The notes below the pieces were generated by a model that searched no databases, was not told the origin of the DNA, and saw only the letters and a program-made list of their open reading frames with translations. From assembly GCF_002571385.2 (NCBI RefSeq), contig NW_019218625.1, positions 1 to 64,000 of the forward strand: a stretch of DNA of 64,000 bases, read 5' to 3'. The translations under genes were made by a program, and so were the position numbers. Positions 6,250 through 49,400 of this stretch are shown piece by piece. This DNA is from Stylophora pistillata. Lineage: Eukaryota. How positions within the stretch are numbered: position 1 is the first letter of the stretch; each line of letters opens with the position of its first letter.

Positions 6250-8088
6250 ATGCTAAAGAAATACCAGTCCCTTGCATGCTTCTTATATATTTCGGTGGTG
6301 TACGTGTCTTTGGGATATGCTGGTAAGTAGTAAGTTTAATTCCAAAGCTATTACTGCTACGAGCTGGGAAATCGTTAGGTTTCAGTCTTACTGACCTATG
6401 GAAAATCCTGCTTAGCATGAATAATTATAGAGAAATTCATGAGGTGGGTTACCAGTCTGTGATTTAGTGAATATTCCTCTTCATAGCAGTCACAAAGGAA
6501 CATCAGATGTATGTATCTAATGTGTTTCATTTTGCGTTTCTAACTGGTCCATGTTTCGGAAGACTTTTAGACATATTTGTGACTCTTCATGTACTCAAAC
6601 ATGAAAGCACAAGCACTAGACACATTATTAATTTATATTGGGGAAGGAAATTAAGCGTCACGCACGTTCGATAACGTAACTTGCGTTGACCTTTACCAAA
6701 TGAAAGAGACCTTTGGTAAAACATTACATTTAAAGACCATAATCTCAAGGCAATCTGCCGTTTACGACATGATCTTAATCGTCTTTCAGACTGCGGCGAT
6801 CAAGGCATTCCTTTACCTCCAACTTCACCACAAATCCGACAGTGCTTAACTGCTGGACCGGTATCGTATTTTTATCTCAGCTTCCCCATTGAATATGAGA
6901 TTACAGCGACGAAGATCTACATTTCAGAAAGCAAAGTTCAATGGATTGAATTGCAGGCGCTACTGTCAAATACGTATGTGAATCGTGATCATTTCAAGGT
7001 AACAGCTTGTTCAGTTGTACTTCTTTCCTTATACGCTCTTCGATTTTTTTTTTCCGGCCTAACTAAAAATCGAGATATCTATGTGAAATGATTGATGTTA
7101 ACTTTGCTCATGGAGTATTCGACTTTTTTTTCTTTTCAGCCACGACACGGTCCTGGGTCACAAGAGTTAGTACTTTCCAAACCAGTCATAACTAGGTCTT
7201 TACGAATTGTGCTGGGGAGACCCCACCAGACCCGCCCCACCCGAATTTGTTTTCTTGGGGTAGTGTATGGATGCGAGGCAACCCCTCAAGGTGAGAGTGT
7301 AGAAAGTTGTGGATAGTCAATTTGAATTAAGTTATTCGATTAAAAAAGCTTTAATAACTATGACGGAAGAAGAACGCTTTTGAGTTCAGATAACTTCTTC
7401 TCCACAAGCAATTTGTGAAAAGCTTCTTTTACAATGAAATGTTAATATTTATGAAATAGTCACCATAGGAGATGAAGCACATTATTATCTATTGTTAAAC
7501 TTTTTTTTTGGTTGTATCTTATCATCATATTAGACCATGTAGGTCATACATAATTCTAATCCTACAGTGTTTTCTCTAACACCTTTCCCGCCTTTTCGCC
7601 CAAAAGCACAGTGCTAAGCTTACATTATTGTATGATGAATGATATAATGCCTTTATTCAAGAAACTGCTCGTAAGATTTCATATCCGCTATTTGCATGCA
7701 ATTAATAAATATATTATTGTCTCGCCTTGTGTTTTATGTCCTTACCGTTTTAGGTTGTATTATGCCTGGCTCTCCAGTCCTCTTCAAAGATGGAGGGAAA
7801 TACTTGAAAGGGCGATTTTCGTTGACCACGAGGCGTTCCGGATGGGAGATTGTTTATGGAGAGAAATTCATCTATAATAACAAAAATATCATTCTTGATG
7901 AGAAACCACCAAGCGTGCTCCTTGAGGGAACTGCAGTCGTTGGGAAAGATTCGGAAGGGAACTTAAGAGAGGGAAAAGCAAAACAAATGTGCTTGTATCC
8001 AAATCAATGCACGGTCGAGACCAACGGTGTAGAATGGCAAAGTAAGTTCGATGACGTCAGGCTTTTGACGGGAAAACTGTGTAAATAA
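6250..8088 (+). CDS. Gene S1: secreted protein (~255 aa), signal peptide + divergent discoidin/FA58C-like domain + Cys-bracketed tandem-Tudor-like module
   Basis: Exons 6250-6322 (MLKKYQSLACFLYISVVYVSLGYA), 6790-6998, 7140-7290 (PVITRSLRI...VYGC, like a discoidin C-terminus), 7754-8088 (CIMPGSPVLF...VRLLTGKLCK*). Open frame across GT-AG joins. Confidence 0.8.
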
Positions 8089-9185
8089 TCTGCGTCTACG
8101 ATCGTTTTTGATATTTAACTCCCTTTTGTCAGTCTTGTTTTTTCAGTTTGTGTTCTTCGCCCGATTAAAACCGGTTTTTCAGCGCTGAAATGTTTTGTAC
8201 ATTTTATGTACTTCTCTCTTCTCAGTACAGCATTCTTTGTTCTAAAAGCTAGAGTACTTTTCATTTCAAAGTTATTTCTATATGATGAAAATAATTAAGA
8301 GGGATGTTTGAGTGCTTTTAAAACTTGCCAAAAGAAAAAACTATCTACAAAGATGGAAGACCTTCGTTCTCATAAATTGATCGATCCTCCACTTCACGAT
8401 CTAGCCGGAAGTCAAACTTGCCAGGAAGAGATAAATTTATCATAAAATACCTTCATATAGAATTGATTCTCGTTCATATTCATTTTAGTTCTCTATATCT
8501 AGATATGGTTAAATGCTTAATAAACATGAAGGAGAAAATGTCATGTTAAGGAATTTTATTTCTAGCAAAAGAAAGGGATTATCGGCAATTAAATAATGCT
8601 TGAACTTGGATGTAAAAGGCACCAATTTGCAATTTTGCGATCGAGCTTTTTGGAGCTTGACCGCTTAAACTGAGATTTAAGCATCCATGAATGATGGAAT
8701 CATTCTGTGTGTGGCTACGTTTGAGAATTAAATAACGTTAACCCACATAACTGAGCTAAAAATAAAATTGTACTTAGATCTCTAAGTAGAGCGGAAATTA
8801 CCGTTTGATAGGTTTTGACCTCTACTTCGCCTGGTTTAATAAGCTTATTCCATAAGAAAATGGTTCATTCAGCTTTTGTTAATAAGTCAAAGTTTTCATG
8901 AATTTTTTTACTTTTATGATTTGCTAACGCGTTAACGCGTTGAAAGTCATATCCAGCTTTGCGCGTCTGTGGAGCAAGAGCATTAATTAAGGGAAGTCGT
9001 AATCATAATTGAGTATGATTTGGCATGTTTTCAGACAAACGCACTGAAGGGATCGGCCTCTGACTATTAATGTTCCGCTTCAGGAGAAGTAACTTTTACA
9101 ATAGAGATAAAGCTCACCTTCAAGTTCCTTATTTTCTGCGTATCGTTATAAGTGTAGACGTCTTATTTTGCTACACAAGCGCCGT

Positions 9186-10786: not shown

Positions 10787-10949
10787 GTTCCCTTATTTAC
10801 AAATGTTTGGTTTTCTTATTTTTTATTTGGTCGTATTGTATCAAGATAGCTAATTTAACATATCTTCCTTTTTATACGTTCATGTACGAGGGGAATATAC
10901 GAGAGTCAATTGATATTTTTTTTTCAAAATGAATAAAGGGGGTAATTCT

Positions 10950-11125: not shown

Positions 11126-12623
11126 TTTTTTTAAAGTCAGGTTTACTGTTAGTTCTATATCGGACTTATATATCACAAAAAGAAATAAATGCTTCGAATC
11201 TTTCAAGATACTTTGTCGCGGGCGCGAGTGAGATAAAAAGCTGTAATCATGAACTAAAAAAAAACCTTCTGTGTTTATCGTCTGAATATATTAACCCTTT
11301 AATTCCCTCCTTTAGCTGCCGTATATGCCTATAAATCAGTTACAAGAAAATGGTGTTAGATCAAGATATTTTCTTCGACCTGATTAGTTTGCGCATTCTC
11401 ACAACCTGTTTGCTTGATAATATATATAACTAACTGCATATATATTATATATATATGCATTATATATATAATGATATATATATGCATTATATATATATAA
11501 TGTGTGGTAGTCGGAAGAAAACAACTACATATGCATCCCTACAGACCTGTTTCGTGGTTGCCCACTCATCAGGGGATTTTAATATATATCAAAAGAGAAG
11601 TATAATCGTTTGTGTCACGATGTGGTCACTGAAAATGTGGATCGCAATGTTTCGACTGTATACTCCTAATCTTATTCAGGTGATATGTCGATTGGGTACG
11701 CATCAACTATAAACGGTTGTGCTCGGCTTTGACCGGATGGAATTCCACGGTCGTGATTGATGCATGTCAGGACCAGGTTTCCCCTACGGTCCACCACCAC
11801 GCGTCTCCTGATCACTTGTTGTATTTCTTGATCATCGGCATCAAGACTTCTGGGATTTCGATATAAAGATATAGTGCCTCACGATACGGTCGCATGACGA
11901 TAGGCTTCCATTTAATTTTAACCCATTTAATTACGTCCTTTTGCGACGCTGAGTGAAAGAGAAATAAAAGAATTTATGTTATGTTAAGATGTGATAGTTG
12001 CAGCATGTTAAGGTCGTGTAATAAAAGGCGGAAGTATTAAAAAAAATGTGATGCTGCGTTAGGAAGGGAGTAAAGCTAAGAGAGATACTCTTTACAGTGG
12101 CCAATGTACATTATTAACTCAGTTGATAAAACCAAATTATCTTTCTATTTATATATGCCTAAGGCTTCACACAAACCAAGGTTAATGCAACAAAACGCTG
12201 CAACAATACTTGTCAAGCGTCGTTAGAAAACGATTACTACTGACCCCAACGAGGAAATGAGAACTACATGAGAAAGAAAAGATTACTACCAGAATAGCTG
12301 ACACCCCAAAGATGAAGTGAGGGCTTTAGTTTCATTGCAGGCACACTGTGGCGTCACTATGGTATGTGGCGAGCATCAATAGTTTCTATGTACACCAAAG
12401 CTTTCTTCCTTGTGGCGTTAAAGCATTTGCGGATGTTGTTATCTTCACCTTTTGACATTTAAGTTCAGTTTCAAGGGAAGTATAAATCAACTTGAACAGA
12501 TTTAAAGAGCACGCACAACAAGGATGCACGAGAACATCGTTGGTATCCGTAAAAGCTTTGTATTTCTTGGCAGGCTCCTACTTCACTAGGCACCAACTGA
12601 AAAACTCTTGCTTGGCTACAATC

Positions 12624-14577
12624 ATGTTAGAGAGAATCAAGCCCCTTGTATGCTTCTTTTACTTTTCAATGGTGTACATCTCTTGGGGATATCCTGGTAT
12701 GTAGTGAACTAAGAAAAAAACTATTATTGATACGAATTCGGAAATCGTTACTAATGTCGGTCTCTCTCCTCATGGAAATTCCTGCTCAGCATAAACAATT
12801 ATAGAGAAGTTCATATGGTGGGTTACCAGTCTGGGATTTAGTGAATATTCCTTTTCATAGCAGTCACAAACGAACATCAGATGTGTATAGCTGATGTGTT
12901 TCATTTTGCGTTTCCAACTCGTCCATATTTCGGGAGAGTTTTAGATACATCTGTGACTCTTCCGGTACGCAAAACATAAAAGTAGAGGTACTAGACATAT
13001 TACTTATTCAGTTTGGGGAAGAAAATTAAGCTTCACGCATGTTAGATTTGAGTCAAGAGATCTTTAATGAACCGTTACATTTAAGGACAATAATTACAAG
13101 ACATGATGTTTTTTATGTTTAAGACTGCGGCGGTCGAGAAATCCCTCTTCCTCTATTTCCATCACAGCCGTGCTCAACTACTGGACGGGTATGGCATTTT
13201 GATTTCAGCTTCCCCACTGAATATGAGATTACTGCGGTGCAGATCTACGTTTCTGACCAAGTTACTGGCGACAGCAAAGTTGAATGGATTCTATTCCAGG
13301 CGCTTCTTTCAAACACATATGTGACTCGTGATTGGTTCAAGGTAACAACTTGTTTTTGTTTTCAGTTTTGTTTTTTTTTTCTGACCTTTACTAAAAATCG
13401 AGGTAACTAAGAGGATGGATCGAAGGTCGTTTTACTCAATGAATATTTGACCTTTCTTTTTTCAGCCACGACACGGTTTTGGGGAATTATTACATCGTGG
13501 CTCCATTATTGAGGTAATAGCTCGTTCACTTGCAATTCTTACCTAAAGTCCCGCCCATTTTTTTTCTGGCTTAACTAAAAATCGAGGTATGATTGAGGGT
13601 CATTTTACATAAGGAGTATTCGATCTTTCTTTTTACAGGCACGAAACGGTTCTGGGAAAAAGTTAGTACTTTCCAAACCAGTTATAACTCGGTCTTTGAG
13701 AATTGTGCTGGGAAGACCCCGCCATACCCTTCGCACCCGAATTTGTTTTCTTGGTGTAGTGTTTGGATGCGAGGCAACCCCTCAAGGTGAGAGTGTAGGA
13801 AGTAGTGGACAGCCAGTTTGAATTAAGTTATTCTATTGAAAAAGCCTTATTCGAATAAACTTTAACTAAAGAAGAATTGAGCTTTTGAACTGATTCCAGA
13901 AAACTTTTTCCCCATAAGCAATTTGTGAAAAGCTTCTTTTACAATGTTAAAATTTTTCAAATAAACACCATAGGAATCAGATGAAGCGTATTATTATTTG
14001 ATGTTAAAAAGTATTAGTTGCTTGTGTCATATCATCATATTAGACCATGTGTTTTTTCTAACACCTTTCCTACCTTTCCTCGCCAAAAGCACAGTGCTCA
14101 GCTTACATCACTGTATGATGGATGATAAAAAAGCCTTTATTCAAGAAACTGCTCGTCAGATTTCAAGTTCTATCCACCATTTGCATGCTAAGAATATTTC
14201 TACTGTAGTCTCGCCTTATGTTTTATGTCCATATCCTTTTAGGTTGTATTATGCCTGGCTCTCCAGTCCTCTTCAAAGAAGAAGGAAAATATTTGAAAGG
14301 GCGCTTTTCGTTGACCACGAGACGTTCCGGATGGGAGATTGTTTATGGAAAAAAATTCATCTATAATAACAAAAATATTATTCTTGATGAGGGACCACCA
14401 AGCGAGCTGCTTAAGGGAACTGTAGTCGTTGGGAAAGATTCGGAAGGGAACTTACGAGAGGGTAAAGCAAAACAAATGTGCTTGTACCCAGATCAGTGCA
14501 CGATCGAGACCAATGGTGCAGAATGGCAAAGTAAATTCGATGACGTCAGGCTTTTGACAGGAAAACTGTGTAAATAA
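12624..14577 (+). CDS. Gene S2: intact paralogue of S1 (~257 aa, or ~273 aa with an extra 48-nt exon)
   Basis: Exons 12624-12696 (MLERIKPLVCFFYFSMVYISWGYP), 13124-13341, optional 13466-13513, 13639-13786, 14243-14577. The frame stays open with or without the mini-exon. Confidence 0.8.
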
Positions 14578-16046: not shown

Positions 16047-19000
16047 ATGAAGTTGATCAGCTTGATTAAGAGGAAGTCAAAGGACATGAATTTCTATGCT
16101 GCTTGTTTCGTTTACTTTTTAGTGGTCTCACTCTGTTTCAGATCGACTGGTAAGTAGCTTGTTAAAAAAAAAAAAAACGTTTGTTTTTCTATGTAAAGAG
16201 CCAGACTTTGCCCTTTCTTTTGCTTTGGGTTTAGTATAGAGCTTGCGATCAATTTCCGTTGTATGAGAAGGGTTTTAACAAATTTCAAATAGTTCTGAAA
16301 AACACCAACGTTAAAGTAGGAACCATTCTATCTAAAACATCGTTATTTATTGAAATTGAGGTGCATTAGAACTAAATCAAACTGCGAAACAGTAAGGTAC
16401 CTTTGGGACTACAAATTTGTTTTAAGATTTGTATAGATAATAGCATGACTTGTAGTGGTATTTGGCATAAAAACCCCTCCATTAATTTTGGCGCGATTTT
16501 ATTGGTTACCTTACGTCACGTGGTGCAAAATCACAGAACAGTTATCACGCAATAACCCCGTCTGCGTCGATGTTTGTCCTCCGATTTTTTTCCGTGAAAA
16601 AGAGACATAGTCAAGACCGTCAAGAGTTTCAACTTTTCCGTTCTCCTATTTACATGGAAGGAAACCAAACTGATTTTTTTTTTTATTTTTGCTTGCTTGC
16701 GTCAATCACGCGCACTTGCCATCAGATTACCACTGGCTTTTTTACTGTGTTTACGCGCAGTTTAATTACAATGTTAAAATTAATGGGAGGGTTATAAAAT
16801 AAATAAACCCCGTTCTGGCTTGCTGGTATGTCGGCTGATAATGTCCTTGGCTGAGAGATTATCCTCAAAATTTCATATTTGCCCTCGAAGCTTCGCTTCT
16901 CGGTCAAATATTCATTTTTCGGACAATCTCTCAGCCGCGGACATTATCAGCCGACATACAAGGCGCCCGAAGGGTTTATCTACTAAATAACATACCGCAA
17001 GTGATATTTTAAAATTATCCAAAATACCACGAGCCGCGAAGAAATGTTAAGAGCCGGTAATATCGCAAATACCGCGGATAGATCATCCTATTATTTATTT
17101 CATAATAGAAGCCGAGAAGCCGAGAAACCTTCGGTAACGCACAAGAGACCTTTATTTCCTCACGTTTGAAGAAATAATCACAGGCGTCTGCTTTCGTACA
17201 ATCTTCTCTCTCCTTTCTCACACATCCTGTTGTCATGGTAACCTTGTTATACCATCGAGTTTTGCTCTTATACCACTATTACACTAAAATAGTGATACTT
17301 TCAACCATCAAATCTCCGACATTTCTCGGCTTATGTCATATTATTTTATTATTGTTTCCATAACTGATTCATACTGCGATGTGATACCATCATGTTGATG
17401 CTAACAGGCTTCTAATAAAGCTGAAGCGGGCAGTTGGTTTAAGCTCTATTTATTTATTTTTGCCAAATGAAAACACAACAAACACGCTAAAAACACCACA
17501 AACTTATTTGAAACACAATACATTTATCTGAAGCACAACACAAACACTGTACTGAAAACAGAACACACAAAATGAAAACACAACACACACAAACTGAAAA
17601 CACAATACACACAAACTGAAAACACAACACACACAAACTGAAAACACAACACACACAGACTGAAAACACAACACAATCGTCCAAAACACAACACACTTTC
17701 CAACGCACTAGTTTTGTTTCCGCTGGGCTGTATGATACGCAGGCGCAATAAAAAGTATGAACATGGCGGATAATAAAGAGGAAGAAGCTATTCGATTCTA
17801 CTTTTCGAAGAATTGTGATCACAATACCATTTTGGACTTTCTTGAAAGATGCCACGGACTAAAAATGTCAAAAAGAACTCTTCTGAACTGTCTAAAAAGG
17901 TATGGTCTGTGCAGAAGAGGAAGGGCAATAGATGAACAAATTGTACGCGGAAATATCGCGAGAGAGCTCGACGGCTCCGGATCGCATCTCGGATACAGGT
18001 CCATGTGGCGAAGGCTTCATTCAAAGTCTGGAATTAATCTTCCAAGGTCAACTGTCCAGGTTTTGTTGGCTGAACTCGATCAGTCTGTGTGTGTTGTGTT
18101 TTCAGTCTTTGTGTTGTGTTTTCAGTGTTTGTGTCGTGTTTTCAGTTTGTGTGCGTTGTGTTTTCAGTTTGTGTGTGCTGTGTTTTCAGTTTGTGTGTGT
18201 TGTGTTTTCAGTTTGTGTGTGTTGTGTTTTCACATTGTATGTGTTGTGTTTTCATTTTGTGTGTGTTGTGTTCTCAGTGTTTGTGTTGTGTTTTGCACTT
18301 ATGGGCCACCGTACTTCTGCGGTAAGCAAACTCGATCCATGACTCCGAACGTACTGCAAATTAAAATCGCTTGAAAAGAAAAGCGGAAAGATGAATCTTG
18401 GATTATCGGTTGCCCCAACAGATTGACACGATTTAGACATTTGGTTCATATCACTGGCCTAGTTTGACATTAGCGAGAAGATGAAAATAAGAACATTTGA
18501 ATAGAAGTTTGCGCAAACTACGAATTCAAACCGCGTTGATCAAGAAGAGCATTCGCTATACCTGTTCAAATGTACCACGGTGACGTACACTTATGGAACT
18601 AAAACTCCTTATAACATGTTGTAGAGCCATTCTAGTTAATATCTCCTCTTTTAGGTCGGAAACATGGTCCTCGACACTACGTGAAGTCATTCCCTTGAAA
18701 TTTTACCTCCCTTCTAACGTGAATGCTTTCCTTAGTTTAAATAACTTAATCCCTGGCCCAGTTAAATTTTACAACATTTCTGATAAAATAATAAAATGTT
18801 ACTCCCCCCCCCTCCCCCTTCCCCGACTTACCAAACAATTCCGCGTTTCCAATTTCTCCCTCCCCTCCCCAAATGACCAAATAATTCCACGTTTACAATT
18901 TCCATACTTTGAAGTTAATTAATAAATGAGCCCAAAAAATGGAAAAAAGTAGCTGGGGTAAAAGACTATAAGATGATGGGAAACGTATAAGTGAAGATTG

Positions 19001-22000
19001 TCCCTCAGCTATTGACTCATCGGCAACTAACCCGGGTTGGGCCAAATGCTTTAATTCAACGCCTCTTTTGCAGAGAGTTGCAGCGATGAGCTTGGAATGC
19101 AAAGTAAGCGAATCCCAAACGAGAGTATTACAGCATCATCTTCAAAACGTACAGATAACTCTCCTCACTTTGCACGTTTGGACGGCCCAAAGGCCTGGTG
19201 CTCGGCGCCACATGACAAATTGCCTTACATACAAATCCAGCTGAGTGAAACAAAGATTATAACTGGAATAAAAACTCAAGGAAGCTCTTCGGATTGGGCA
19301 TGGGTGACAAAGTATGGAATCAAGTTTCTGGAAAATGGAGCATGGAAAGAATACAATAAGGTTCCCTAATTTTTAAATGTTTAGTTTTCATATTTTGGTT
19401 TGGTCTTCGGTTTACCACATTGCATCACCATGGTTAATTTAATACAGACTCTTTTTTACACCTTCATGTTCGAGGGGAAGCATGAGAGTCACTTGAGATA
19501 TTTCTTTAAAGTTAGTTAGGTTTAGTGTTAGTTTTATATCCGATTTATATATCACGGAAGCAGAAAAATAGTCCGAATCTTTCATGATTCTTGAAACTTG
19601 GAAATTATTTAGTTCCTCCGTCGCGAGCGCAAGAGAGAGAAAAGCTCCAACCATGGACTGAAAAAACCTTCAGCACTTCCGTTGACTCTTTCAACTTGCA
19701 AGATCCAACCTTTAATTTTCTCCTCTAGCTGCTTCATATTTCCTTATAAATTAATTACAAGAAATTGGTATTAGATCAAGATATTTTCTTCTACCTGATA
19801 AGTTTGAGCATTATCATTTCCTGTTGGCTAGATAATGTATAGATATATATCAAAAAAGTATTATAATCGTTTGTGTAACGATGTGGACATGTACATTGTA
19901 GATGCGGATCGCGACGCTTCTAAAGCAAACTTCAAATCTTCTTCAGGCGATGAGGTCGATTGGGTACACATCACCTTTAAACTTTTGAGCTCAGCTTTGA
20001 CGGGATGGAATTCTTGAATATCCCTGTCATGCTCTTTGATCCTCATCTGCATGGGCCTTCCAGTCTTGCCGATAGAAGGAGAAGTTACAAGTTACTCTTT
20101 CTGGGAATTAGAGGTTAACCACGCTTGAATCTAAAGCGTTAAGGCACAATGACCTTATGTTGCAAATGAACCATCTAAAAACTTATAACTCTCTGAGTTT
20201 CAGGAGTTAGCAGGCAACACAAACGTTAATGGCTTGGGGTCAAATATCCTAGATCCTCCAATCAGAACACAGTCGATTAGAATCTATCCCAAGAATCCAG
20301 TCACATTGGCTGGCCCCGATCCTAAACCCTGTTGCTTAAGATTAGAGCTGTATGGATGTTCTGCACCAGGTATGATTAAGGGATTCACCTATTGGCAATT
20401 TTTCATCGTCTGAAATAATTCAAAGATATAGTGCCTCTCGATACGGTCGCATGAAAATAGGCTTCCTTTTAACCCAGTTGATTAGGTCCATTTGCGACAC
20501 TGAGTGAAAGAGAAATAAAAGGATTTATGGTCTGCTCTGATTTGATAGTTGTAGCATGCTAAGGTCGTGTAATAAAAGGAGGAAGTATCCGAAGAAACTG
20601 TGGTGCTGCGTTAGTAGGGGAGCAAAGCTAAGAAAGATACTCTTTAGAGTGGCCAATGTACATTATGAACTCAGTTGATAAAACCAATTTATCTTTCTAT
20701 TCATATATGCCTAATGCTTCCTACAAAATAAGGTAAATGCGACAAAACACTGCAACAACACTTGTTAGACGTCGTTAGAAAACGATATCTACTGACTCTA
20801 ACTAAGACATGAGCGCTACATATCTCTGGTTGGAAAGAAAAAATAGTTACCAGAATGGCTGACACCCTGCAACATGAAGTAAGCGCTTTAGTCAGTTATA
20901 ACAATCATAATTCACCATGGTATTTGGCGCGTATCAACAGCATTTATGTGCATGGAGCGCCATGATGCATCATCTGGCCATATCTACTACTGCTTCATCT
21001 GCTTTTGACTTTATTTTTAAGGACCTATATGTGAGCCTCCGATTTCTCCTTATGGTTCAAACATCGTTTATCCTGCACAGCAAGGAAACCACGAAAATGG
21101 CAGCGTGGTTGTCTTTTCTTGTGAACCAGGCTTCTTCCTCACTGGGTTGCCAGTAATAAGATGCAGTGGGAACACTTGGACACAAATGAATTTCAAGTGT
21201 TTACTAGGTAAGAGCTGTTTTCTATCTTTTTATCGCCGAACAGTGCCATGATCGAGTTTGAAAAATCAGTCAACCTGAAGCAGTAGAGCGATCGACTGCT
21301 GGTGTTGGAGTAGAGGGAAAATGATTTGTTGTATGACCGACATACTTGATATATAAATGTCAGTGTTATGAGAAGAGAAGCTTATTTAGTTACTCGGAAT
21401 CCCATTCTTAGCTCGTTCGTTGGTTCATTTCCCTATCTTTGCATTTGACAGTTCTTTTTATAGAGAAAATGTGACAAGTGAAAATGTCGACCCTGTTACA
21501 GAAGTATAAACATGCAAAAATTATCCAAACAGCGGTAGAACGACAATAATCAGTTCATTTCGTTATTATTGCTGTCTAAGATTCTGAGCCACTCGGTGGT
21601 CTTATTGTTTAGTTTTTGGTTTATCTGTAACAGTATTTGAATCAAACACACGATTTTTGCGATCCCACGTGATCGAATGACATATGCTGACCAGAGATAA
21701 AGGTAGATTCAGTTCAAGAATTTCTTACGTTATCTGGTGCAGACATTGCATTTTGTAAGTTGTTGTACTCCTCTCTCTGTTTCAAGAGCTTTGCCATGAA
21801 ATATGAGGTATGTTTGATGATCAGGCCGTGCATGTAACATCTACTAATATAATCAAAGCCGCGTCGGAATTTCACTCTTATACAAATTTTCACTTGATCA
21901 GTAGACGTCTTTTTTAAATGTGTTAACGGCAGACAGAACTTGGAATAATTACCTGTTAAACTAAGCCCCGCCTCTTACCGCCCGTCCTTCAAATCAGCGT

Positions 22001-23445
22001 TATGAATAAAAAGATAGCTATGTCCCTCTCCCTTGGTAGTTTTTGAATTTCAATGAAACTGACCCATTGCAAGGGAAACACATATAGCCGAATTCACAAG
22101 TGCTGTTGTACCATTAATTTATTTCCACATTAAGTGTGCAACGAGGCCTTGGATCTCCTCAAATTCAACATCGGGTTCGTACACGGAATATGGGCGACTT
22201 ACATTGAGGTACACCTTCGAAAGGAAAGCTTTATTACAGCGGCAAGTATCCGCCTGAAAGATAACAGACATAAGGTTCGACAGATTTATTTAAAGGCGCG
22301 TATTTCCAACAAATGGGTACAAATTGGTCGTCATTTTAAGGTAACATTGTTTAAATTCTTTATGATTATATCTACATTATTATCGCCCTTTTCCCTTACT
22401 TTGTGTATTACTGGCTTCGAAATATTGTAAGTCTGACCCACCCGCAGACCATAGGGAGACGGAGTTGATTCACCTCTCCAATTTCTTATTCTTTTGCACA
22501 AAGTATATCCAATGCCGCTTTAATTTTGAGGAAAGGAAGAAATACTTACTCGGCAAAATATGAAAAATTAACTTCCAAAAAGCATAGTTACATTTTCCTA
22601 AACGAATAAAATGTGATATTTTTTCAGCCACCCGTCAGTGAAGCGGAGGAAAAATTTAAACTTTCTCAACCAGTTCTCGCTCAGTCTTTGCAAGTCCTAA
22701 TCATTACACGACATAGTTATGTCTTTACATTTCCAACATCTACAAGAGTGTTTGGATGTAAGCCTGTTTTTCGAGGTAAGAACTAAGATCATGGATAAAN
22801 NNNNNNNNNNNNNNNNNNNNNNNNNNNNNNNNNNNNNNNNNNNNNNNNNNNNNNNNNNNNNNNNNNNNNNNNNNNNNNNNNNNNNNNNNNNNNNNNNNNN
22901 NNNNNNNNNNNNNNNNNNNNNNNNNNNNNNNNNNGAATTAATTTAGAAACCACCTCTTCTTCGAAACCGAACAGTACTGATAGTTGTATGATGTGTGATA
23001 TCCTCTGGTACAAAATCTCTGTTCTAGAAACTATGTGAATTTTTATCGCAGTCGTTATCTCCAATCACGTATCACGTCTGCATCACTTTTAGGTTGCATC
23101 ATACCAGGCTCCGCAGTCCTCTTCAGGGAAGGACAGACTTATTTGAAAGGGCGTTTCATCTCTATCGCGAGGGGTCAACTGCGGGAAGTTGTTTATGGAG
23201 ACAATTTCTTATATAAAAGCAAAGATGAAGTCATTCTTGATGAGAAGCCAAACTTGACTGAACTGCCAGAAGGAACTTCAGTCGTTGGAGAAGATACGAG
23301 AGGGATCTTAAAAGAGGGAAAAATAAAACGAGTATGTAGTTCAACTCAGTGCACCATTGAAACCGATGGTACAGAATGGCAGAGCAAGTTAGAAAATGTT
23401 CGAGTCTTCAGAGGAAATGTGTGTGAGAAATATCTGTATACCTAA
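16047..23445 (+). CDS. Gene L2: secreted protein (~482 aa), signal peptide + FA58C/discoidin + CCP + divergent discoidin-like domain + Cys-bracketed tandem-Tudor-like module
   Basis: Exons 16047-16149 (signal; second possible ATG at 16086), 19074-19360 (CSDELGMQSKRIPNESITASS...AWC...ITGIKTQG...WVTKY), 20204-20369 (PPIRTQSIRIYP...CLRLELYGC), 21022-21207 (CCP), 22135-22340, 22628-22775, 23093-23445. 1449 nt in total, open frame. Confidence 0.8.
16455..17030. mobile_element. MITE-like insertion with an internal palindromic sub-element
   Basis: Ends gtggtatttggcataa / ttatccaaaataccac are inverted repeats; internal hairpin ~16805-16978. The block is missing from the paralogous L1 intron (~9390). 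Confidence 0.6.
17317..18313 (+). mobile_element. Non-autonomous, probably IS3EU-like DNA transposon relic with inverted minisatellite arms and an N-terminal transposase fragment
   Basis: Absent from the paralogous L1 intron (flanks rejoin at caaatct|cttctgcgg). (AAAACACAACACACACAAACTG)n at ~17470-17697 is mirrored at ~18085-18296. ORF from 17757 reads EEAIRFYF...MSKRTL...GYRSMWRRL. The right end is ...gggccaCCGTA. Confidence 0.55.
19861..20090 (-). mobile_element. Degenerate Penelope-like GIY-YIG remnant in an L2 intron
   Basis: Minus strand reads SIGKTGRPMQMRIKEHDRDI, matching the YIGxTxR...RxxEH motif. Confidence 0.5.
22800..22934. other. Assembly gap inside an L2 intron
   Basis: Run of N. 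Confidence 1.
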
Positions 23446-28465: not shown

Positions 28466-29204
28466 CCACCTGTCGGTGGAAAAATTGAAACATTCTCAAC
28501 CAGTTCTCACTCAGTCTTTACAAGTCCTAATTATTACACGACATAGTTATGTCTTTACATTTCCAACATCTACAAGAGTGTTTGGATGTAAGCCTGCTTT
28601 TCGAGGTAAGAACTAACATCATGAATAAACTTTATATTCTTGTCCTCTCTACCTCTTAAATAGTAAGTGTTTGAATTAACATTAAAAATCACTTCTTCGA
28701 AACCTAACAGCATTGCTTTTTGTATGATGTATGAGATCCTCTGGCACGAAATCTCTGCTCTAGAAACTACTGGTTCAGCTTTAATATACATACAGTGAAT
28801 TTTGTCTCAGTCGTTATCTCGAATCACGCGTACCACGTCTGCATCACTTTTAGGTTGCATCATACCAGGCTCCGCAGTCCTCTTCAGAGACGGACAGTTC
28901 TTTGAAAGGGCGTTTCGTTTCTATCGCGAGGGATCAACTGCGGGAAGTTGTTTATGGAGACAAATTTTTATATAAAAGCAAAGATGAAGTAATTCTTGAT
29001 GAGAATCCAAACTTGACCGAACTACCAGAAAAAACTGCGGTCGTTGGGGAAGATCCGAGAGGGATCTTAGAAGAGGGGAAAATAAAACGAGTGTGTAGTT
29101 CAATCTAGTGCACTATTGAAACCGACGGTACAGAATGGCAGAGCAAGTTAGAAAATGTTCGAGTCTTCAGAGGAAATGTGTGTGAGAAATATCTGTTTAC
29201 CTAA
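28466..29204 (+). pseudogene. Gene L3: orphan, frameshifted duplicate of the last two exons of L2
   Basis: 28466-28605 is 140 nt versus 148 nt in L2. 28854-29204 has a 2-nt deletion and a TAG at 29106-29108. Confidence 0.9.
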
Positions 29205-29369
29205 AATACAAAAATAAAACTTAAGTCTAAGGGACCAGTTATTGTTTATTACCTGTAGCACACAGTTTAAGCTGCACACCCAAAATTTGTCATTTCTTAA
29301 CTGCGGTCAATTTCATCGTGACTCGACCAAAATCCTCCAGCCCTCCTTCCCCGGTGATAAATAATGACA

Positions 29370-43495: not shown

Positions 43496-46400
43496 ATGCG
43501 TTGCGTTGTAAGCTTTATTTTCGGTCTCTTTCTGCTCCAGCTGGCAAGAGGCGAAGAGAATAAATCAGGTAAGTCATTGTGTGCTGGGCGGTAAAACTGA
43601 TTATCTCTATTTCAAGTTTAATAAGTTTAGCAACGGGTATTTGTCATGCAACCATTGTAGATGAATAAAAGAGAAAAAAAAAGGGTGCAGAGACAAAAGA
43701 TGACGGCCATTGAGATTTCGGTTTGAAATTTTGATTACGTTGTGGTATTTACTTAATTCTATGTATCAGTGAACTAAGTGTTGAACGTAACCGGACCTGT
43801 TAAAAATGTTCCTGCGAGATAAGTTTACCTTCCTTTTTTTTCTACGAAAATCCTTGTGTTCGAGCAACTTAGATACCGTGTTGTGTGGGGTGCCGCAAAC
43901 TGAGGCAACCCTTTTAGTCGTGGGGTGAGGAAAAATATGCTTTCCCCAGGGGAGAGCTCTCCAATAACAAAATAGCCCAAGCAGTGGTATGTTAGATTTG
44001 TTCCAATTTCAGCGGGGTGCTTAGGGTAGCAAGGATAGCACAGGAAGTGAATCGGATCATGTAACGCAATAGCCGCTTGCTCGCTCGCTCCCGCGTTCGC
44101 GCGTGGTTATCGCGATCGTACATGACCAACGAGTAATTAGTTACACAGACACGCCGTTTGCGATTATAATATTGATTATTTAAATGTCCTGTCACCTTGA
44201 GCCGAGTCATTCTCTTGACAACAGCAATTATATTGTTTAATTGGTATTCGACGGTACAAATACTCTACTTACTCCTTATTTTGGGCTCAATAAAGAATTG
44301 CACAGCTCAAGATGATGATCTTTTTTTTTTTTTTTGATTATAGTCAAGAAATGCCTTGCCCTAGAAGCTCCGGAAAATGCTGAAGCAATTGGCAATAACA
44401 CAGTTGGTTCTGTTGTCAAATTCTTGTGGAAAAAGGGCTTTTTTCGACTTGGAAGTCCTCACAGAATCAGGTGTAAGTCAAATGGACAATGGACTAAGCC
44501 TAATGTGTCTTGTGTTGGTGAGTACTGATAAAATGTTACTTTCATATATCATGGCTACGACTGTCCTTATGACTTTTTTGTAGCGTGTGTACAATACCAT
44601 CAATCCGTGAATCTTTCCCTTTCTTGTAGTTGCTTGTTTTCTTTTCGTGGTTTCTGTTCGGTAAAGTTGTTTTATTTTGCTGATTTTGTCGCATTATTTC
44701 CCCTAAATGATATACAGTCGTTACCCATGTTTCACTTAGTAATGTTGACGATCCTTTTTTTTGCTCACATTTTGTTTATTTTAATTTAGTCATCGGATCG
44801 TTTTCCTTTTCAGCTGTAAGTTGTGGAGACCCTGGCTCTCCCTTGAATGGAAAACGCATGGGTTGGATATTTCAGTACAATCACAGTGTCACTTTCGATT
44901 GCCATCGCGGTTTTAAACTGGAGGGACCTAAAACAAGAACCTGCCTTGAGAACCAAACCTGGAGTGCCAGCCAGCCAGTTTGCAAACGTAAGATTAGAAC
45001 ATGAAGCAAGATTTTCCCATGTGTTTTAAAAATATAGCTTACAGTTAAAACAAATGATCATGCTCCCGTAGCAATGAAGTCTCTTGCGTAACGAACAGAA
45101 TAAACGATTCCACCCATGATGGTAAAATGGATGATGCAACAAAGAGAGAACCGAGTCCCATTATGTCCTCATAATGAAACAAAACCCAACTTAAATAAAC
45201 GAACCCCCGTTACGCCGAATTAGTTTCCCGCCCTTTAGCACTTCTTCATACGTACCTGGGTGTGCTTATTTTCGGGTTATTGTGGAATCCCCACAAAACG
45301 AATCCCTGACCATAGAGCGTAACCATCTAACCCGATAAAATGAATCCTTTTTTTCGTCCTCGACAACATAGTAGAAGTAAAATAAATGGAATAGTATTGC
45401 GTGAAAACGATCCAACGTTATGACAGAGACCTTTTTTGATCGAAATATTTTAGCTGTTCCATGTGAGGAGCCTCCAAAAGTGGTTGATGCGGTGATGTTA
45501 AGCGGTGGTTTCGTGTTTGGTGCACCCGTGTATTACACTTGTAGTGAAGGGTATAAATTGCAAGGACCAGACACGTTGGCATGTGGAGAAGATGGAAAAT
45601 GGGTCGGTGAGACTCCGGTTTGTAAAGGTGAGTTTCTTGGTTGACTTTCGTTTCATACTTTTATTTTCACTCTACGTAGACGAAGCACGAAGTAAAATGA
45701 AATGGCCAGCTGCTTTCAAAATATTCCGCTCACAAAAAAAATTAACTTTGACAACAATAATCAAACATCAAAAGTGAGACATATTTGTGTCGAACAATAA
45801 ATTCTCGACTTACCGTAACTCAGCGCATGAAATAACCAACCCCAACAAACAACAGCAACAAATGCCCACAGGGAGTGGCGGTGTAGCCGAATGGTTAGGG
45901 CACTAGACTCGTTGTTCCGGGCTCAAGCACTACACCCTGCTACTTACTGGATTTGTTCTCATTTGCCCCAAGTGCAACTACCTGGCTGCACCTTGTAGAG
46001 AACCAACTGGTCTCTCCTCTGCCATTTAGGAGTTTTCAACACTGGGTTTATTTGCAATGTTTGTTTCCATATTTTTTTCTTGGGAAGAGAAGAGTGATTA
46101 GGTAGCAGTCGATTAAGGCCATTGCTTATTATTATTAATTTTGTCGCTATCATTATTGCCATTACTATCATTATCATTAGTAAGTGTTATTACAATGAGA
46201 TTTACCTCCTTTTGCATTCCCCTTTTAGCCATAACGTGTGCTGATCCGGGTACACCCCAACACGGTTCAAGAAATACAACCGGCCCTCCATTCAGTCATA
46301 TGTCGTTAATCTTCTACGAATGCAGTAATGGATACATTTTGTATGGAACTGACAGGCGCTCTTGTAATGGTGACGGGGAGTGGACTGGGGTACAACCGTT

Positions 46401-49400
46401 TTGTGTTGGTAAATAAGTAAAGAGCTCTGCGCCTTCGATTAATGTTAAAGTGCACCTAAACCCAAAAAATTTTTTTCGCTTAACGAAATAAGCGTATTTT
46501 TTGGAGTATTTCTGTACAAAAAATATTTTATTTGCCCAGATCTTCAATTTTCTGTGCCCAGTCAACATGATACGAAAAAATCGGCCGCCATCTTGCTCCA
46601 CGACCGAGTTTAGAGAGGAATGGCTCTAGCGGGTAATGTGTCGTCAAATCGAGAACGCGAAAGTCTGCATTTCACACATTTTCACTTGTATGGGAAGGTT
46701 GTAGTCGATATTTTCCGAAAATATGCCGACTAAGTGTGTTGCAGGAGGATGTAGCAAAGTGCGAAATTTGGAAGAGGGTATCGCGCTTCATACATTCCTC
46801 ATACAACACACCTAGTCGGCATATTTCGGACAATATCGACGACAACCTTCCCAAACAAGTGAAAATGTGTGAAATGCAGACTTTCATGATCTCGATTTGA
46901 CGTCACATTACCCGCTAGAACCATTCTTCTTTAAACTCGGTCGTGAGCCAAGATGGCGGCCGATTTTCCGTATTTTGACTGGGCACACAAAATTAAAGAT
47001 TTGAGCAAATAAAAACATTTTTGCAAATAAATGCTCCAAAAAATAAGTTTATTTCGCTAAGCGAAAAAAAAATTTGGGGTTTCGGTGCACTTAAATGATA
47101 ACTGGATGAAACAACATTTTTTTCGCTTTTTTTATACCTAATGGTGACAATCAGTTTCTTCCCCTACAATCATTGCGCTGTTTTAGTGCTTCTTTCGCTT
47201 TCCCTTCCTCACCGCTAACGACTATTCTCCATTTTATCCTGTTTTCACTCCTCTTCAATCCACTGTCCTTCAATCTTCTTTCCATTTTCTCTCACTTACT
47301 TTTTTCAAGCTGCCTCTCTCTTAACTTCTCAGCTTCAACTTATTAAAGCTGATTGTCATCAGCACGTTGTTGAGAGGAAAAGGCGAATTTAAATACTCGA
47401 GTGTGTTATTTTTCATTCATATATTTTTTATTCTATAGAATGCGCAGGTGTTAACACGCCGGTTTTCGTCAGGAATGGGCAACGTTTCATCCACGGAATA
47501 ATTCAGCAAAAAAGCAAAAATATCGTGACGGTTCTGACTGACTCACCTAAAGAAGAAAGAGATGTTGTGATATTTGGACCTGGAACACAGCATTACATCA
47601 TAGTGGAGGACAAACTCCCATCCTCGAAGAACGTCTTCTTGGGATCGCGTGTGATTGCAATGCAAAGAGGATCGTACATCTTTGCTAAGGTTGACGCGAT
47701 CAATGGTGACAAGTATTCGGTAACATTTGAGGACAGACAGCGAACTAAGCGGACAGTGGCATTAGAGCATATCCGCAACTTGTTTCCTCCAACATTCTGT
47801 GGTACGTAAGTCATGGTGCCTTTAATTAAGCTAAGAAGTGTACTGAAGGGTTGAGGAAATCTTTAGTAGCTACCTTAAACAAAATCTGTCTGGATCATAC
47901 GGTCAATCTGCTCAGCTCAACCTTCCCTACTATCTTATGGAAATGGCCACTACTTTCTTGTGTATCCTAACGGTAAAAAGCCTTACATAGCCTCACCCAA
48001 ATAAGGACATGCTCCTTCTGGTTTGACCGCATCTTAAGAAGAAACTTTCCTATGGCTGTTACGTACCCCTATCAAACAGCACACCGCCTTGATATATTGA
48101 CGTGAGCCACAAATGGAGCCTTTAAGACTTTGGATTAGCCCAACTAACAGTCGCCGTTCTATAAATAGAGCCAAGCTTCTTGGAAATTAACTTTTGGAAG
48201 CACGATTATCAAAGTCTAGGTTTAAATCTATAGATTTTAGAAATCTTGGAAAAAAATAAAAATTTGCACCCAATCTAAGACAGTTTTCTGACATTACACT
48301 GTTAATTTAAACCAATTAAGCAACATGTCCAGACCCTGGAAAACCAGACAAAGGCTTTCGAACAGACAACTTAGAGGAGTTCATAGTAAGGACCGAAGTA
48401 GAATTTGGTTGTGAAATAAATACCCAGCTGCTTGGATCAAGTAAGAGAACATGTCAACCAAATGGAAGATGGTCTGGAGAACAACCGACCTGCGAAAGTA
48501 AGTGTAAAATGATATTTATCAAAATGCATATTATTGAGAGAAAGAAACGAAAACCGCCCTGCAGGTGTCAGTGTTAAGTAAGAGGGATTCGCGTGAGGAA
48601 AAAAAATTCAAAGTACAGACAAACTTTCACCAAAAACTCGACGTCTTAGCGTCATTATGACACAGCTATATCGAGAATGAGGATTAGTCAAAGACAGAGC
48701 TGTGAAGACTTAATAGAGTTGGTAGTTAATAAGAGTCGGAAATATTTTATCTTGATTAATAAATGATCATCGCCTTTCCACCGCCTCGATTCGCCTCTGC
48801 TATTAGCTGTTAATTTGAGAGTCTTTTGTATTTATTTATTTAGTTATTTACTGGCTATGGTTTCTGTGAGCATCTAAAGATCAGACCTTATGAACGTAAG
48901 GTACCGAACAAAGACCCTGGCACAAATGGAGTCAGTTTGCACGCTTAGACACGGGCCTAACCTGTAACGATGCCTTTTTATTTCAGTTAGTCTGAATTTA
49001 AACGTGCATATCAAGATGTAATTTTTAGATGCATGAATAAAAAAAAAAAAAATGTTGCATCTATTTGCCAATAGTTACTTCTTGCTGGGATCTCGATGTC
49101 TTTCCTCCCAAAAACGGCAAACGAATTGGTGATGACTTTTCTATTGGAAGCACCGTAGCCTTTTCCTGTGATGAGGGATATGAGCTTGACGGAGAATCGA
49201 AGCTGACATGTCGTCCGGATGGTCAGTGGTCTGACAGAACGCCTTTGTGTAAAGGTATGACAAAGCAGAACCCCTTCTTTGCTTCAGCCCGTGTTAAAAA
49301 TCAATAACTTTTTTTTACTTTCAATTTCCAACCAGATTCTCAATGGATCGATGTCCGCCAGTTCTTTTACTATCAGCTATTTGAATTTTCTATTCTTTCT

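What the first reader, a model, noticed from the sequence alone, without database searches (positions are those of the whole stretch)
7754..47801. Unfamiliar extracellular, Cys-bracketed tandem-Tudor/SH3-barrel-like module shared by two otherwise different gene types
Seen: single exons with phase-1 acceptors at 7754-8088, 14243-14577, 23093-23445, 28854-29204 (pseudogene) and 47439-47801 encode ~110-120 aa with a common pattern: C-x5-V-x2-[RK]-x-G-x2-[YF]-x2-G ... I-x(1,2)-D-x2-P-x(5,6)-G-[TS]-x-V-[VI]-[GA] ... [LF]-[ED]-x-[VI]-R-x(6,7)-C. The second half in gene W (LGSRVIA...YIFAKVDAINGDKYSVTFED...VALEHIR) resembles a Tudor/Agenet barrel. Known: Tudor barrels are normally intracellular methyl-Lys/Arg readers. 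Inference: a barrel pair was exported to the secretory pathway, closed by a terminal disulfide and made into a shuffleable module. It may be the docking unit linking the discoidin proteins and the inhibitor.
Basis: partly seen in the sequence, partly recalled or inferred. Interest (0 to 1): 0.85.

Follow-up and report, generated by a model that had tools for sequence, protein, structure and literature searches.

The report
Secreted disulfide-bracketed tandem Tudor module in coral
Single exons in several secreted coral proteins encode a pair of Tudor-type beta-barrels bracketed by cysteines, a fold that in animals is otherwise described only inside the cell as a reader of methylated proteins, so this looks like an intracellular domain redeployed outside the cell.

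Summary
The five exons are real, at the stated coordinates; the copy at 28854-29204 is broken. The S/L exons are 52-54% identical and have 7 copies in the genome. The W exon is single-copy and conserved in other stony corals.

W and S/L show no direct sequence similarity (BLASTP nothing; trimmed hhalign P 0.066). Both AlphaFold models are confident (pLDDT 86.5 and 90.6). Both superpose on the same tandem Tudor domain, SETDB1 residues 197-316 (Z 11.3-11.8, about 107 residues, 2.6 A). Profiles link W, and then L, to Tudor proteins.

All three gene types have signal-peptide first exons. RNA contigs splice the L module onto FA58C-Sushi-discoidin-like exons, in frame across the intron holding the N gap. 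An orthologous transcript ORF reads signal peptide-CCP-module-CCP-Kazal-Kunitz-NTR.

The genome holds further Cys-bracketed copies, next to CCP arrays and an FA58C domain. It also holds multi-Tudor genes without Cys brackets, whose units are likewise phase 1-1 exons.

One shared mobile module is not shown (AU test p 0.04 against a single clade). W-L docking has only weak in-silico support. I rate it a new variant of a known kind. Function is unknown and the canonical aromatic-cage motif looks degenerate.

The parts
7754..8088 (+). S1 terminal exon: Cys-bracketed tandem Tudor (TTD) module, 110 aa plus stop
   Evidence: It is 53% identical to the L module and a member of alignments A1/A3.
14243..14577 (+). 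S2 terminal exon: TTD module, 110 aa plus stop
23093..23445 (+). L terminal exon: TTD module, 116 aa plus stop
   Evidence: AF2 pLDDT 90.6. SETDB1 TTD Z 11.3, rmsd 2.5 A over 106 aa. RNA joint 22775/23093.
28854..29204 (+). Broken paralogue of the L module exon (2-base deletion and a TAG)
   Evidence: 86% identity to L, 1 TAG.
47439..47801 (+). W internal phase 1-1 exon: TTD module, 121 aa, between CCP4 and CCP5
   Evidence: AF2 pLDDT 86.5. SETDB1 and BAHCC1 TTD Z 11.7-11.8. Single copy in the genome. Conserved in other corals.
16047..16149 (+). L exon 1: start codon(s) and hydrophobic signal peptide, phase-1 donor
   Evidence: The loose end of an RNA contig before 19073 maps to 16119-16148. 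Sequence read. The signal peptide was judged by eye.
19072..19360 (+). L exon 2: first part of the F5/8 type C domain
   Evidence: Pfam F5_F8_type_C 53.5 bits. RNA joint 19360/20204.
20204..20369 (+). L exon 3: end of the F5/8 type C domain
21022..21207 (+). L exon 4: Sushi/CCP
   Evidence: Pfam Sushi 35.1 bits. Joints 20369/21022 and 21207/22135.
22135..22340 (+). L exon 5: first half of the discoidin-like unit (no Pfam hit)
   Evidence: Joints. Weak similarity to the S1 exon.
22628..22775 (+). L exon 6: second half of the discoidin-like unit, ends ..FGC.., phase-1 donor
22800..22934 (.). Assembly gap, inside the last intron of L
   Evidence: It is spanned by the spliced RNA joint 22775/23093 in three runs. 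Not filled.
6250..6324 (+). S1 exon 1: signal peptide, phase-1 donor
   Evidence: read by eye. The S2 counterpart is in open frame 12486-12701.
43496..43569 (+). W exon 1: signal peptide, phase-1 donor
   Evidence: The orthologue ORF P0031 starts with a similar signal peptide.
46117..46413 (+). Open frame holding the W CCP exon just upstream of the module (exact exon ends not determined)
   Evidence: Pfam Sushi 33.5 bits.
48320..48574 (+). Open frame holding the W CCP exon just downstream of the module
   Evidence: Pfam Sushi 37.4 bits.

Best explanation
Each exon encodes a complete tandem Tudor domain (TTD): two SH3-like beta-barrels packed as in the SETDB1, BAHCC1, SGF29 and UHRF1 TTDs. Here the TTD is placed in secreted proteins and carries one Cys at its first residue and one near its last, probably forming a closing disulfide.

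The host is a pocilloporid stony coral. The carriers are:
- W: signal peptide, four CCP, TTD, two CCP, Kazal/follistatin-like, two Kunitz, NTR. This is a multi-headed protease inhibitor.
- L: signal peptide, F5/8 type C, Sushi, discoidin-like unit, TTD.
- S1 and S2: signal peptide, discoidin-like unit, TTD.

The genome has at least four more Cys-bracketed TTD exons. One sits in a CCP-CCP-FA58C-TTD gene, two follow six CCP exons, and one on contig C63 has the same exon borders as W.

The likely source is the pool of TTD-unit exons of cnidarian multi-Tudor genes. These lack a signal peptide and a Cys bracket, and in this genome they are also symmetrical phase 1-1 exons, so they fit extracellular mosaic genes without any change of frame. 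Whether W-type and S/L-type stem from one recruitment or two is unresolved; the tree leans towards at least two.

Mechanism (inferred, not shown): a non-catalytic binding or docking module. The canonical [FY]-D-D-G-D cage motif of the units without Cys brackets is degenerate in both types, so classical methyl-lysine reading is unlikely. Protein-protein docking, possibly between the lectin-like S/L proteins and the inhibitor W, is the best guess. About 0.85 of my confidence rests on what it is and only about 0.25 on how it works.
For: Fold:
- AF2 gives pLDDT 86.5 (W) and 90.6 (L) with the same strand order. ESMFold2, run without alignments, gives chain pLDDT 88-92.
- The Foldseek top hits of both models are tandem Tudor/Agenet structures, E 3e-5 to 1e-3, TMq up to 0.65 and 0.74.
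- VIA-align places both models on SETDB1 197-316 with Z 11.3 and 11.8, rmsd 2.5-2.7 A over 106-108 aa. BAHCC1 TTD scores Z 11.7 (W) and 9.4 (L).

Sequence:
- The W-family profile, searched against 1.8 billion proteins, finds Tudor-repeat proteins: Nematostella A7SWQ8 at 4e-7 and Actinia XP_031571579 at 1.3e-4 over the full module. These carry Tudor_5, BAHCC1-like_Tudor and Agenet above Pfam thresholds.
- The iterated profile scores L-type exons at 20-25 bits (P about 1e-8 at Z=1). The maximum over 4000 shuffles is 8 bits, and L is the top non-W frame among 256 window open frames.
- BLASTP against the coral's own TTD exons: L 30% over 104 aa (E 3.5e-5), W 25% over 119 aa (E 1e-3). L against C63 gives E 2e-5. 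W against C8:283k gives E 3e-6.
- Language-model features of L point to Tudor_3/Agenet clusters at 0.91.

Secretion:
- Signal-peptide first exons are present.
- RNA joints link all L exons.
- Orthologue ORF P0031 is continuous on 2.3-2.6 kb contigs assembled from three sequencing runs, with a signal peptide and Sushi, Kazal and Kunitz around the module.
- The W neighbours are Sushi exons.

Exon design:
- W and C63 both read AA|TGC...TGT G|gt.
- Three TTD-unit exons on C210 are phase 1-1.

Disulfide:
- In both models the only isolated beta-bridges are at residue 2 and at the residue before the last Cys.
Against: - No curated Tudor-clan Pfam model reaches its threshold on W (Agenet 18.7 bits against 27), and none hits S/L at all.
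- S1 and S2 alone score only about 3 bits with the iterated profile.
- C81 is missing in some S/L relatives, so the second disulfide is not general.
- The alignments behind the models are shallow (14-16 rows).
- Signal peptides were judged by eye.
- No protein-level evidence of secretion, and no ligand.
- Docking support is weak.
Confidence: 0.72

Rival explanations
1. One reading: one specific mobile module, recruited once, closed by a disulfide and then shuffled between the inhibitor W and the discoidin proteins, where it serves as their mutual docking unit.
For: - All copies share the same design, with Cys as the first residue, Cys near the end, and a phase-1 acceptor.
- Both types lie in one 64-kb locus, and they may lie on one contig in a relative: hits P0001 and P0027 both list a longest contig of 58,156 bases.
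- The C8:283k gene has L-like architecture (CCP-CCP-FA58C-TTD, with a CEK.Y.T tail) but a W-like TTD (E 3e-6 to W).
- Complex prediction of W-TTD with L-TTD: median ipSAE 0.49 (0.48, 0.79, 0.49) against a best control of 0.07. The runs agree in at least 69% of contacts and the partner pLDDT is at least 88. The mark was reached by 51 of 78 solved complexes and 2 of 108 mismatched pairs.
Against: - There is no direct W-S/L similarity.
- Each is closer to TTD exons without a Cys bracket than to the other.
- In the tree, S/L groups with C63 and W stands apart. Holding all Cys-bracketed rows together costs 18.3 log-likelihood units, p-AU 0.04.
- The tool itself says that passes at 0.60 or under are more often wrong than right, and that neighbouring genes drawn blind passed in 7 of 44 cases.
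Confidence: 0.25
2. The extracellular copies descend from secreted bacterial Tudor/chromo-like domains by horizontal transfer, not from intracellular animal Tudor genes.
For: - Bacterial chromo/Tudor-like domains are consistently secreted, often tandem, and some carry disulfide cysteines (PMC5906684).
- The W profile finds metagenome proteins with a signal peptide directly followed by a TTD (P0056, P0058, P0071).
- The atlas neighbours of L are bacterial Tudor_3/Agenet clusters.
Against: - The coral exons have spliceosomal introns of the same phase as the coral's own TTD-unit exons without Cys brackets.
- They align end to end with those exons.
- W's PPTFCG tail matches the PP.YFG tail of cnidarian copies without Cys brackets.
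- The atlas is mostly bacterial, so its taxa carry little weight.
Confidence: 0.06
3. The module keeps a Tudor-type reader function outside the cell. It would bind a methylated or quaternary-ammonium ligand, such as methylated residues or choline-type head groups on microbial or matrix surfaces, through a residual aromatic pocket.
For: - W keeps invariant Y79, F81, Y92 and nearly invariant F96 and E97 in barrel 2.
- S/L keeps Y16 and F21 as invariants among the five copies of this genome, and Y40 nearly invariant across relatives.
- C63 keeps a canonical W..YY..YEDGD pattern and hits Tudor_2 at 28 bits.
- The bacterial secreted versions keep the cage (PMC5906684).
Against: - In alignment A4 the [FY]-D-D-G-D cage motif seen in some units without Cys brackets reads TFEDRQ in W and IETDG in S/L.
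- Read against the 53BP1-type cage as I recall it, the aromatic after strand 1 appears replaced by Asn/Gln in W and by Glu in S/L. This was not checked in 3D.
- No ligand data exist.
Confidence: 0.12
4. The shared pattern is chance and the fold calls are prediction artefacts. The exons would be unrelated lineage-specific sequences.
For: - There is no significant direct W-S/L alignment.
- No Pfam hit is above threshold.
Against: - Two predictors give confident models.
- Both models match the same 120-residue stretch of SETDB1 at Z above 11.
- Profile evidence with shuffle controls.
- Full-length collinear BLASTP alignments to TTD exons.
Confidence: 0.03

Closest known systems
Nuclear tandem Tudor domains: SETDB1 Tudor pair (197-316), BAHCC1 TTD (8ye8), SGF29, UHRF1 TTD, FMRP/FXR Agenet pair, 53BP1
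   Same: Two five-stranded SH3-like barrels with the same inter-barrel packing. Z is 9.4-11.8 with rmsd 2.5-3.6 A over 105-109 of 116-121 residues. The linker motif hh.D..P and the closing IR.L motif are shared.
   Different: Those are intracellular readers of methylated histones with aromatic cages. The coral modules have signal-peptide-bearing hosts, terminal Cys residues, CCP/FA58C/Kunitz neighbours and a degenerate cage motif. Sequence identity is only 14-22%.
Cnidarian multi-Tudor repeat proteins (Nematostella A7SWQ8/XP_048587640; Actinia XP_031571579; coral genes on C210, C343, C90, C100)
   Same: The unit size is the same, about 115-125 aa. In this coral each unit is one phase 1-1 exon. 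They align end to end at 24-30% identity with both W and L.
   Different: They have no signal peptide at the predicted N-terminus and no Cys bracket (the tail is PP.YFG instead of PPTFCG). Several units carry canonical [FY]-D-D-G-D cage motifs. They form tandem arrays of units rather than a single unit among extracellular domains.
Secreted bacterial chromo/Tudor-like domains (Kaur, Iyer, Subramanian, Aravind 2018, PMC5906684)
   Same: These are Tudor-like SH3-fold barrels in secreted proteins, often tandem, and some have disulfide cysteines. The metagenome proteins P0056, P0058 and P0071 have a signal peptide followed by a TTD.
   Different: They are prokaryotic, linked to peptidases and cell-wall contexts, and keep the aromatic cage. 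The coral copies are spliced animal exons in CCP/FA58C/Kunitz mosaics.
MIA/OTOR/TANGO1 family: extracellular or luminal SH3-like domain stabilised by disulfides (my own knowledge; papers listed)
   Same: It is a precedent for an SH3-fold barrel, normally cytoplasmic in animals, working in the secretory pathway with added disulfides as a protein-binding module.
   Different: It is a single classical SH3 barrel, not a Tudor pair. There is no sequence relation, and it was not tested here.
WFIKKN1/2 (WAP-follistatin-Ig-Kunitz-Kunitz-NTR), for the W gene as a whole
   Same: The tail is Kazal/follistatin-like, Kunitz, Kunitz, NTR.
   Different: W has no WAP or Ig hit. Instead it has six CCP repeats with the TTD inserted between the fourth and fifth. 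Orthology was not tested.

Membership tests
Tandem Tudor domain (Tudor 'royal family', Pfam clan CL0049) | Two consecutive five-stranded SH3-like barrels packed as one unit | tested here: met
   AF2 models. Foldseek probability 1.00 to TTD structures. VIA Z 11.3-11.8 over about 107 residues to SETDB1 197-316.
Tandem Tudor domain (Tudor 'royal family', Pfam clan CL0049) | Significant sequence match to a curated Tudor-clan model | tested here: inconclusive
   - W against Agenet scores 18.7 bits (cut-off 27). The best family member reaches E 3.5e-5, and DUF4819 reaches 1.6e-3.
- S/L has no hit.
- The W-family profile does reach bona fide Tudor proteins in the 1.8-billion library.
- The iterated profile reaches L at 20-25 bits with clean controls.
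Tandem Tudor domain (Tudor 'royal family', Pfam clan CL0049) | Aromatic cage for a methylated Lys/Arg | tested here: inconclusive
   Tested by alignment only. The [FY]-D-D-G-D cage motif of units without Cys brackets reads TFEDRQ in W and IETDG in S/L. Some aromatics are retained. There was no 3D check.
Mobile extracellular module of mosaic proteins (class 1-1 exon) | Encoded by one exon with phase-1 introns on both sides, or a phase-1 acceptor if terminal | tested here: met
   W and C63 read AA|TGC...TGT G|gt. S1, S2 and L have a phase-1 acceptor followed by a stop codon. The RNA joint 22775/23093 confirms the L acceptor.
Mobile extracellular module of mosaic proteins (class 1-1 exon) | Occurs in signal-peptide proteins beside known extracellular domains, in more than one architecture | tested here: met
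   Four architectures were found:
- CCP-TTD-CCP-Kazal-Kunitz-NTR.
- FA58C-Sushi-discoidin-like-TTD.
- CCP-CCP-FA58C-TTD.
- Six CCP exons followed by TTD.
Sources. Signal peptides were read by eye.
Mobile extracellular module of mosaic proteins (class 1-1 exon) | Structural disulfide(s) | not testable with these tools
   The terminal Cys residues are conserved. In both models the isolated beta-bridges lie at residue 2 and next to the last Cys. No coordinates or chemistry were available.
PF16090 (DUF4819, listed as 'Cic' by another tool) | Score above the curated cut-off of 27 bits | tested here: not met
   W scores 12 bits. The best relative reaches E 1.6e-3, and the C8 copies reach 17-19 bits. 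One search lists it as weak.
F5/8 type C (discoidin) domain, for the 'discoidin proteins' that carry the module | Pfam PF00754 above 28.2 bits | tested here: met
This holds for L only, with 53.5 bits on exon 19072-19360.

The most novel reading that the evidence does not exclude
The Cys-bracketed tandem Tudor modules are a heterotypic docking system of a coral humoral defence locus. The lectin-like FA58C/discoidin proteins (S, L) would bind a target surface and, through TTD-TTD contact, recruit the CCP-Kazal-Kunitz-NTR inhibitor W, which lies head-to-head with a CCP-trypsin protease gene. This would localise protease control much as complement regulators do. It would be the first extracellular use of a Tudor pair in an animal.
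Probability: 0.12. Interest if true: 0.82.

Novelty: new variant of a known kind. Interest (0 to 1): 0.62.

Why it matters
Tudor-family barrels are textbook intracellular readers of methylated proteins. The one survey I found states that secreted versions are a bacterial trait, in contrast to eukaryotic ones (PMC5906684). My full-text searches found no paper on an extracellular Tudor domain in animals.

The case is concrete and testable. An intracellular domain appears to cross into the extracellular domain repertoire. The likely route is still visible in one genome: TTD units that are already phase 1-1 exons, addition of two Cys residues, and insertion into CCP and FA58C genes.

It also adds an uncatalogued module to coral secreted proteins in a locus with complement-like parts (CCP-trypsin proteases, FA58C lectin-like proteins, and a Kazal/Kunitz/NTR inhibitor). 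Current Pfam models miss it, so such genes are under-annotated.

Tried and rejected
- **Direct W-S/L similarity.** BLASTP of W against L found nothing. hhalign gave P 0.0038 untrimmed and 0.066 once translated intron flanks were removed, so I dropped the claim of direct similarity.
- **Sequence search of PDB.** It gave only faint hits: the S/L profile against the PHF19 Tudor at E 0.03, and nothing meaningful for W.
- **Spurious profile hits.** P0036 (Ig array) and P0039 (SdrD repeats) scored by summing many weak stretches. I treated them as spurious and left them out of the iteration.
- **Complex prediction of W-TTD with L-TTD.** The verdict was weak support: median ipSAE 0.49, best control 0.07. 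The mark was reached by 51 of 78 solved complexes and 2 of 108 mismatches, but passes at 0.60 or under are more often wrong than right. The runs agree in at least 69% of contacts, and the partner pLDDT is at least 88. I do not count this as evidence of binding.
- **Single-origin test.** Cys-bracketed copies as one clade are marginally rejected (p-AU 0.04). Long branches are in play and the backbone is unresolved, so neither one nor several origins is established.
- **Literature.** No hit for DUF4819 and none for extracellular or secreted Tudor in animals.
- **C63 context.** The exon's neighbourhood within about 5 kb holds only transposon-like frames, so its host gene was not found.
- **Spliced models.** Architectures were read exon by exon by reference, from RNA joints, and from the natural orthologue ORF P0031.

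Full report
**1. The observation**

The window comes from a pocilloporid stony coral. The genome is 398 Mb, and the best named relative of the W exon is a Pocillopora damicornis protein at 91% identity.

Each follows an AG acceptor with two bases and then a Cys codon, which is a phase-1 acceptor.
- S1 (7756-8085), S2 (14245-14574) and L (23095-23442) run into a stop codon.
- W (47441-47803) ends TGT G|gt, so it is a symmetrical 1-1 exon.
- The copy at 28854-29204 is broken by a 2-base deletion and a TAG.

S and L modules are 52-54% identical, with four conserved Cys. The genome holds seven copies: four here, two on C1178 and one on C8. W is single-copy and has only the two terminal Cys.

**2. 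The assembly gap**

The N run at 22800-22934 lies in the intron between the exon that ends at 22775 and the module exon that starts at 23093. Contigs of three polyA RNA runs show GT..AG joints at 19360/20204, 20369/21022, 21207/22135, 22340/22628 and 22775/23093. One 719-nt record covers the last three exons with 0-1 mismatches. The two sides of the gap are therefore joined in frame in the mRNA.

**3. Are the W and S/L modules alike?**

*Direct comparison: no.* BLASTP gives nothing. hhalign gives P 0.0038, which falls to 0.066 once translated intron flanks are trimmed.

*Structure: yes.*
- AlphaFold models built on 16- and 14-row alignments are confident (pLDDT 86.5 and 90.6) and have the same order of strands.
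- A second predictor, run without alignments, also folds both chains at pLDDT 88-92.
- The Foldseek top hits of both models are tandem Tudor or tandem Agenet structures.
- VIA-align places both on the same stretch of SETDB1 (197-316), with Z 11.3 and 11.8 and rmsd 2.5-2.7 A over 106-108 residues. BAHCC1, SGF29 and UHRF1 tandem Tudor domains follow close behind.

*Sequence, by transitive evidence: yes.*
- A profile of the W family searched against 1.8 billion proteins finds Tudor-repeat proteins of Nematostella, Actinia and others. These pass Pfam thresholds for Tudor_5, BAHCC1-like_Tudor and Agenet.
- After those hits are added, the profile scores L-type exons at 20-25 bits. The maximum over 4000 shuffles is 8 bits, and L ranks first after W among 256 open frames of the window.
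- S1 and S2 on their own score only about 3 bits, but they are clear paralogues of L.
- Language-model features of L also point to Tudor_3/Agenet clusters.

**4. Are they extracellular?**

- L exon 1 (16047-16149), S1 exon 1 (6250-6324) and W exon 1 (43496-43569) each encode a short hydrophobic leader and end in phase 1. I judged these by eye. An RNA contig ties L exon 1 to the FA58C exon.
- L then reads F5/8 type C (53.5 bits), Sushi, two discoidin-like exons without a Pfam hit, and the module.
- W reads four Sushi exons, the module, two Sushi exons, Kazal, two Kunitz and NTR.
- A natural orthologue ORF of 718 aa lies on contigs of 2.3-2.6 kb assembled from three sequencing runs. A continuous ORF of that length on so short a contig implies spliced mRNA. 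It has a signal peptide and the same order of domains, with the module between Sushi repeats.

**5. Wider context in the same genome**

Homologues of the Nematostella multi-Tudor proteins exist here. On C210, three successive units are each one exon of about 125 aa with phase-1 introns on both sides. W and L align end to end with these exons at 25-30% identity. In the joint alignment the invariants are a Val in strand 1, D..P in the linker, and the Arg of IR.L.

A genome search with that alignment found more Cys-bracketed copies:
- C8:282841-283218 sits after two Sushi exons and an FA58C domain. It has a tail like that of L but a TTD that matches W (E 3e-6).
- C8:40200-40520 and C8:56395-56709 follow six Sushi exons and end in RPRFC.
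- C63:503937-504284 has the same AA|TGC...TGT G|gt borders as W and matches L at E 2e-5.

Copies without the bracket end in PP.YFG where W has PPTFCG.

The Cys-bracketed tandem Tudor exon is therefore a recurrent extracellular module in this coral. The likely raw material, TTD units that are already 1-1 exons, sits in the same genome.

**6. One origin or several?**

I built a maximum-likelihood tree of 33 units with the bracket residues removed.
- Its backbone is unresolved.
- S/L groups with C63 (support 93/86).
- The W family stands apart.
- Forcing all bracketed copies together costs 18.3 log-likelihood units, p-AU 0.04.

With long branches in play this is only a lean towards two or more recruitments.

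**7. Function**

Nothing here measures function. In alignment A4, the [FY]-D-D-G-D cage motif carried by several units without Cys brackets reads TFEDRQ in W and IETDG in S/L. Classical methyl-lysine reading therefore looks unlikely.

W has a strikingly invariant stretch, GPGTQHYI.VED..P, between the two barrels. That is where I would look for a binding site.

W-TTD with L-TTD gave a median ipSAE of 0.49 against a best control of 0.07, which the tool grades as weak support. The mark was reached by 51 of 78 solved complexes and 2 of 108 mismatches, but passes at 0.60 or under are more often wrong than right. I keep it as the leading guess at about one in four.

**8. Comparison with what is known**

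- The fold is the known tandem Tudor domain.
- Secreted Tudor-like domains, some with disulfides, are described in bacteria and are contrasted there with eukaryotic versions (PMC5906684).
- Metagenome proteins with a signal peptide followed by a TTD also turned up here.
- The MIA/TANGO1 family is a precedent for an exported, disulfide-stabilised SH3 barrel in animals (my own knowledge; papers listed).
- I found no paper on an extracellular Tudor domain in animals.
- No Pfam model captures these exons.

Hence my rating: a new variant of a known kind.

**9. Verdict**

Interest is 0.62.

Noticed in passing
window 17736-18371 and 19072: One RNA contig (run X8) joins sequence at 18015-18044, inside a 212-aa Cys-rich, transposon-like open frame, to the FA58C exon of L at 19072. 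Run X1 instead joins the signal-peptide exon at 16119-16148. This may be an alternative 5' exon or a chimeric transcript that would lack the signal peptide.
   Followed up: partly
window 20590-20700: Inside an intron of L there is a short stretch with very high RNA depth (up to about 2100, against 10-80 on the exons). It has 'opposite strands' joints at 20611/20682-20695 and many different loose ends. It looks like a highly expressed dispersed inverted-repeat element.
   Followed up: no
G000:C8:35500-69900 (L039, L035, L042): Two near-identical copies of a gene with at least six Sushi exons followed by a Cys-bracketed tandem Tudor exon lie about 16 kb apart. They are on the same contig as an S/L-type copy at 98.9 kb and the CCP-CCP-FA58C-TTD gene at 283 kb.
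   Followed up: partly
L038:7135-7725 (-), i.e. G000:C8:285134-285724: The open frame that starts the FA58C domain of the C8 gene runs on into sequence that looks like the tail of a non-LTR reverse transcriptase. This may be a transposon insertion next to or inside that exon.
   Followed up: no
proteins P0056, P0058, P0071 (metagenome contigs): Proteins with a typical signal peptide directly followed by a tandem Tudor unit and an Ala/Pro/Thr-rich linker were found by the W profile at E 2e-4 to 7e-4. They are likely bacterial secreted Tudor-like proteins of the kind described in PMC5906684.
   Followed up: no
window 12486-12701, 13123-13818 versus 6132-7313: S1 and S2 are tandem duplicates about 6.5 kb apart, each with its own signal-peptide exon. 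The two exons before the module have no Pfam hit and are only 29-38% identical to the matching L exons.
   Followed up: partly
Pfam PF16090: The same accession is called DUF4819 by the family scan and 'Cic' by the contig look-up. It gives repeated sub-threshold hits on barrel 2 of W-type and C8-type modules, so that family may itself be Tudor-like.
   Followed up: no
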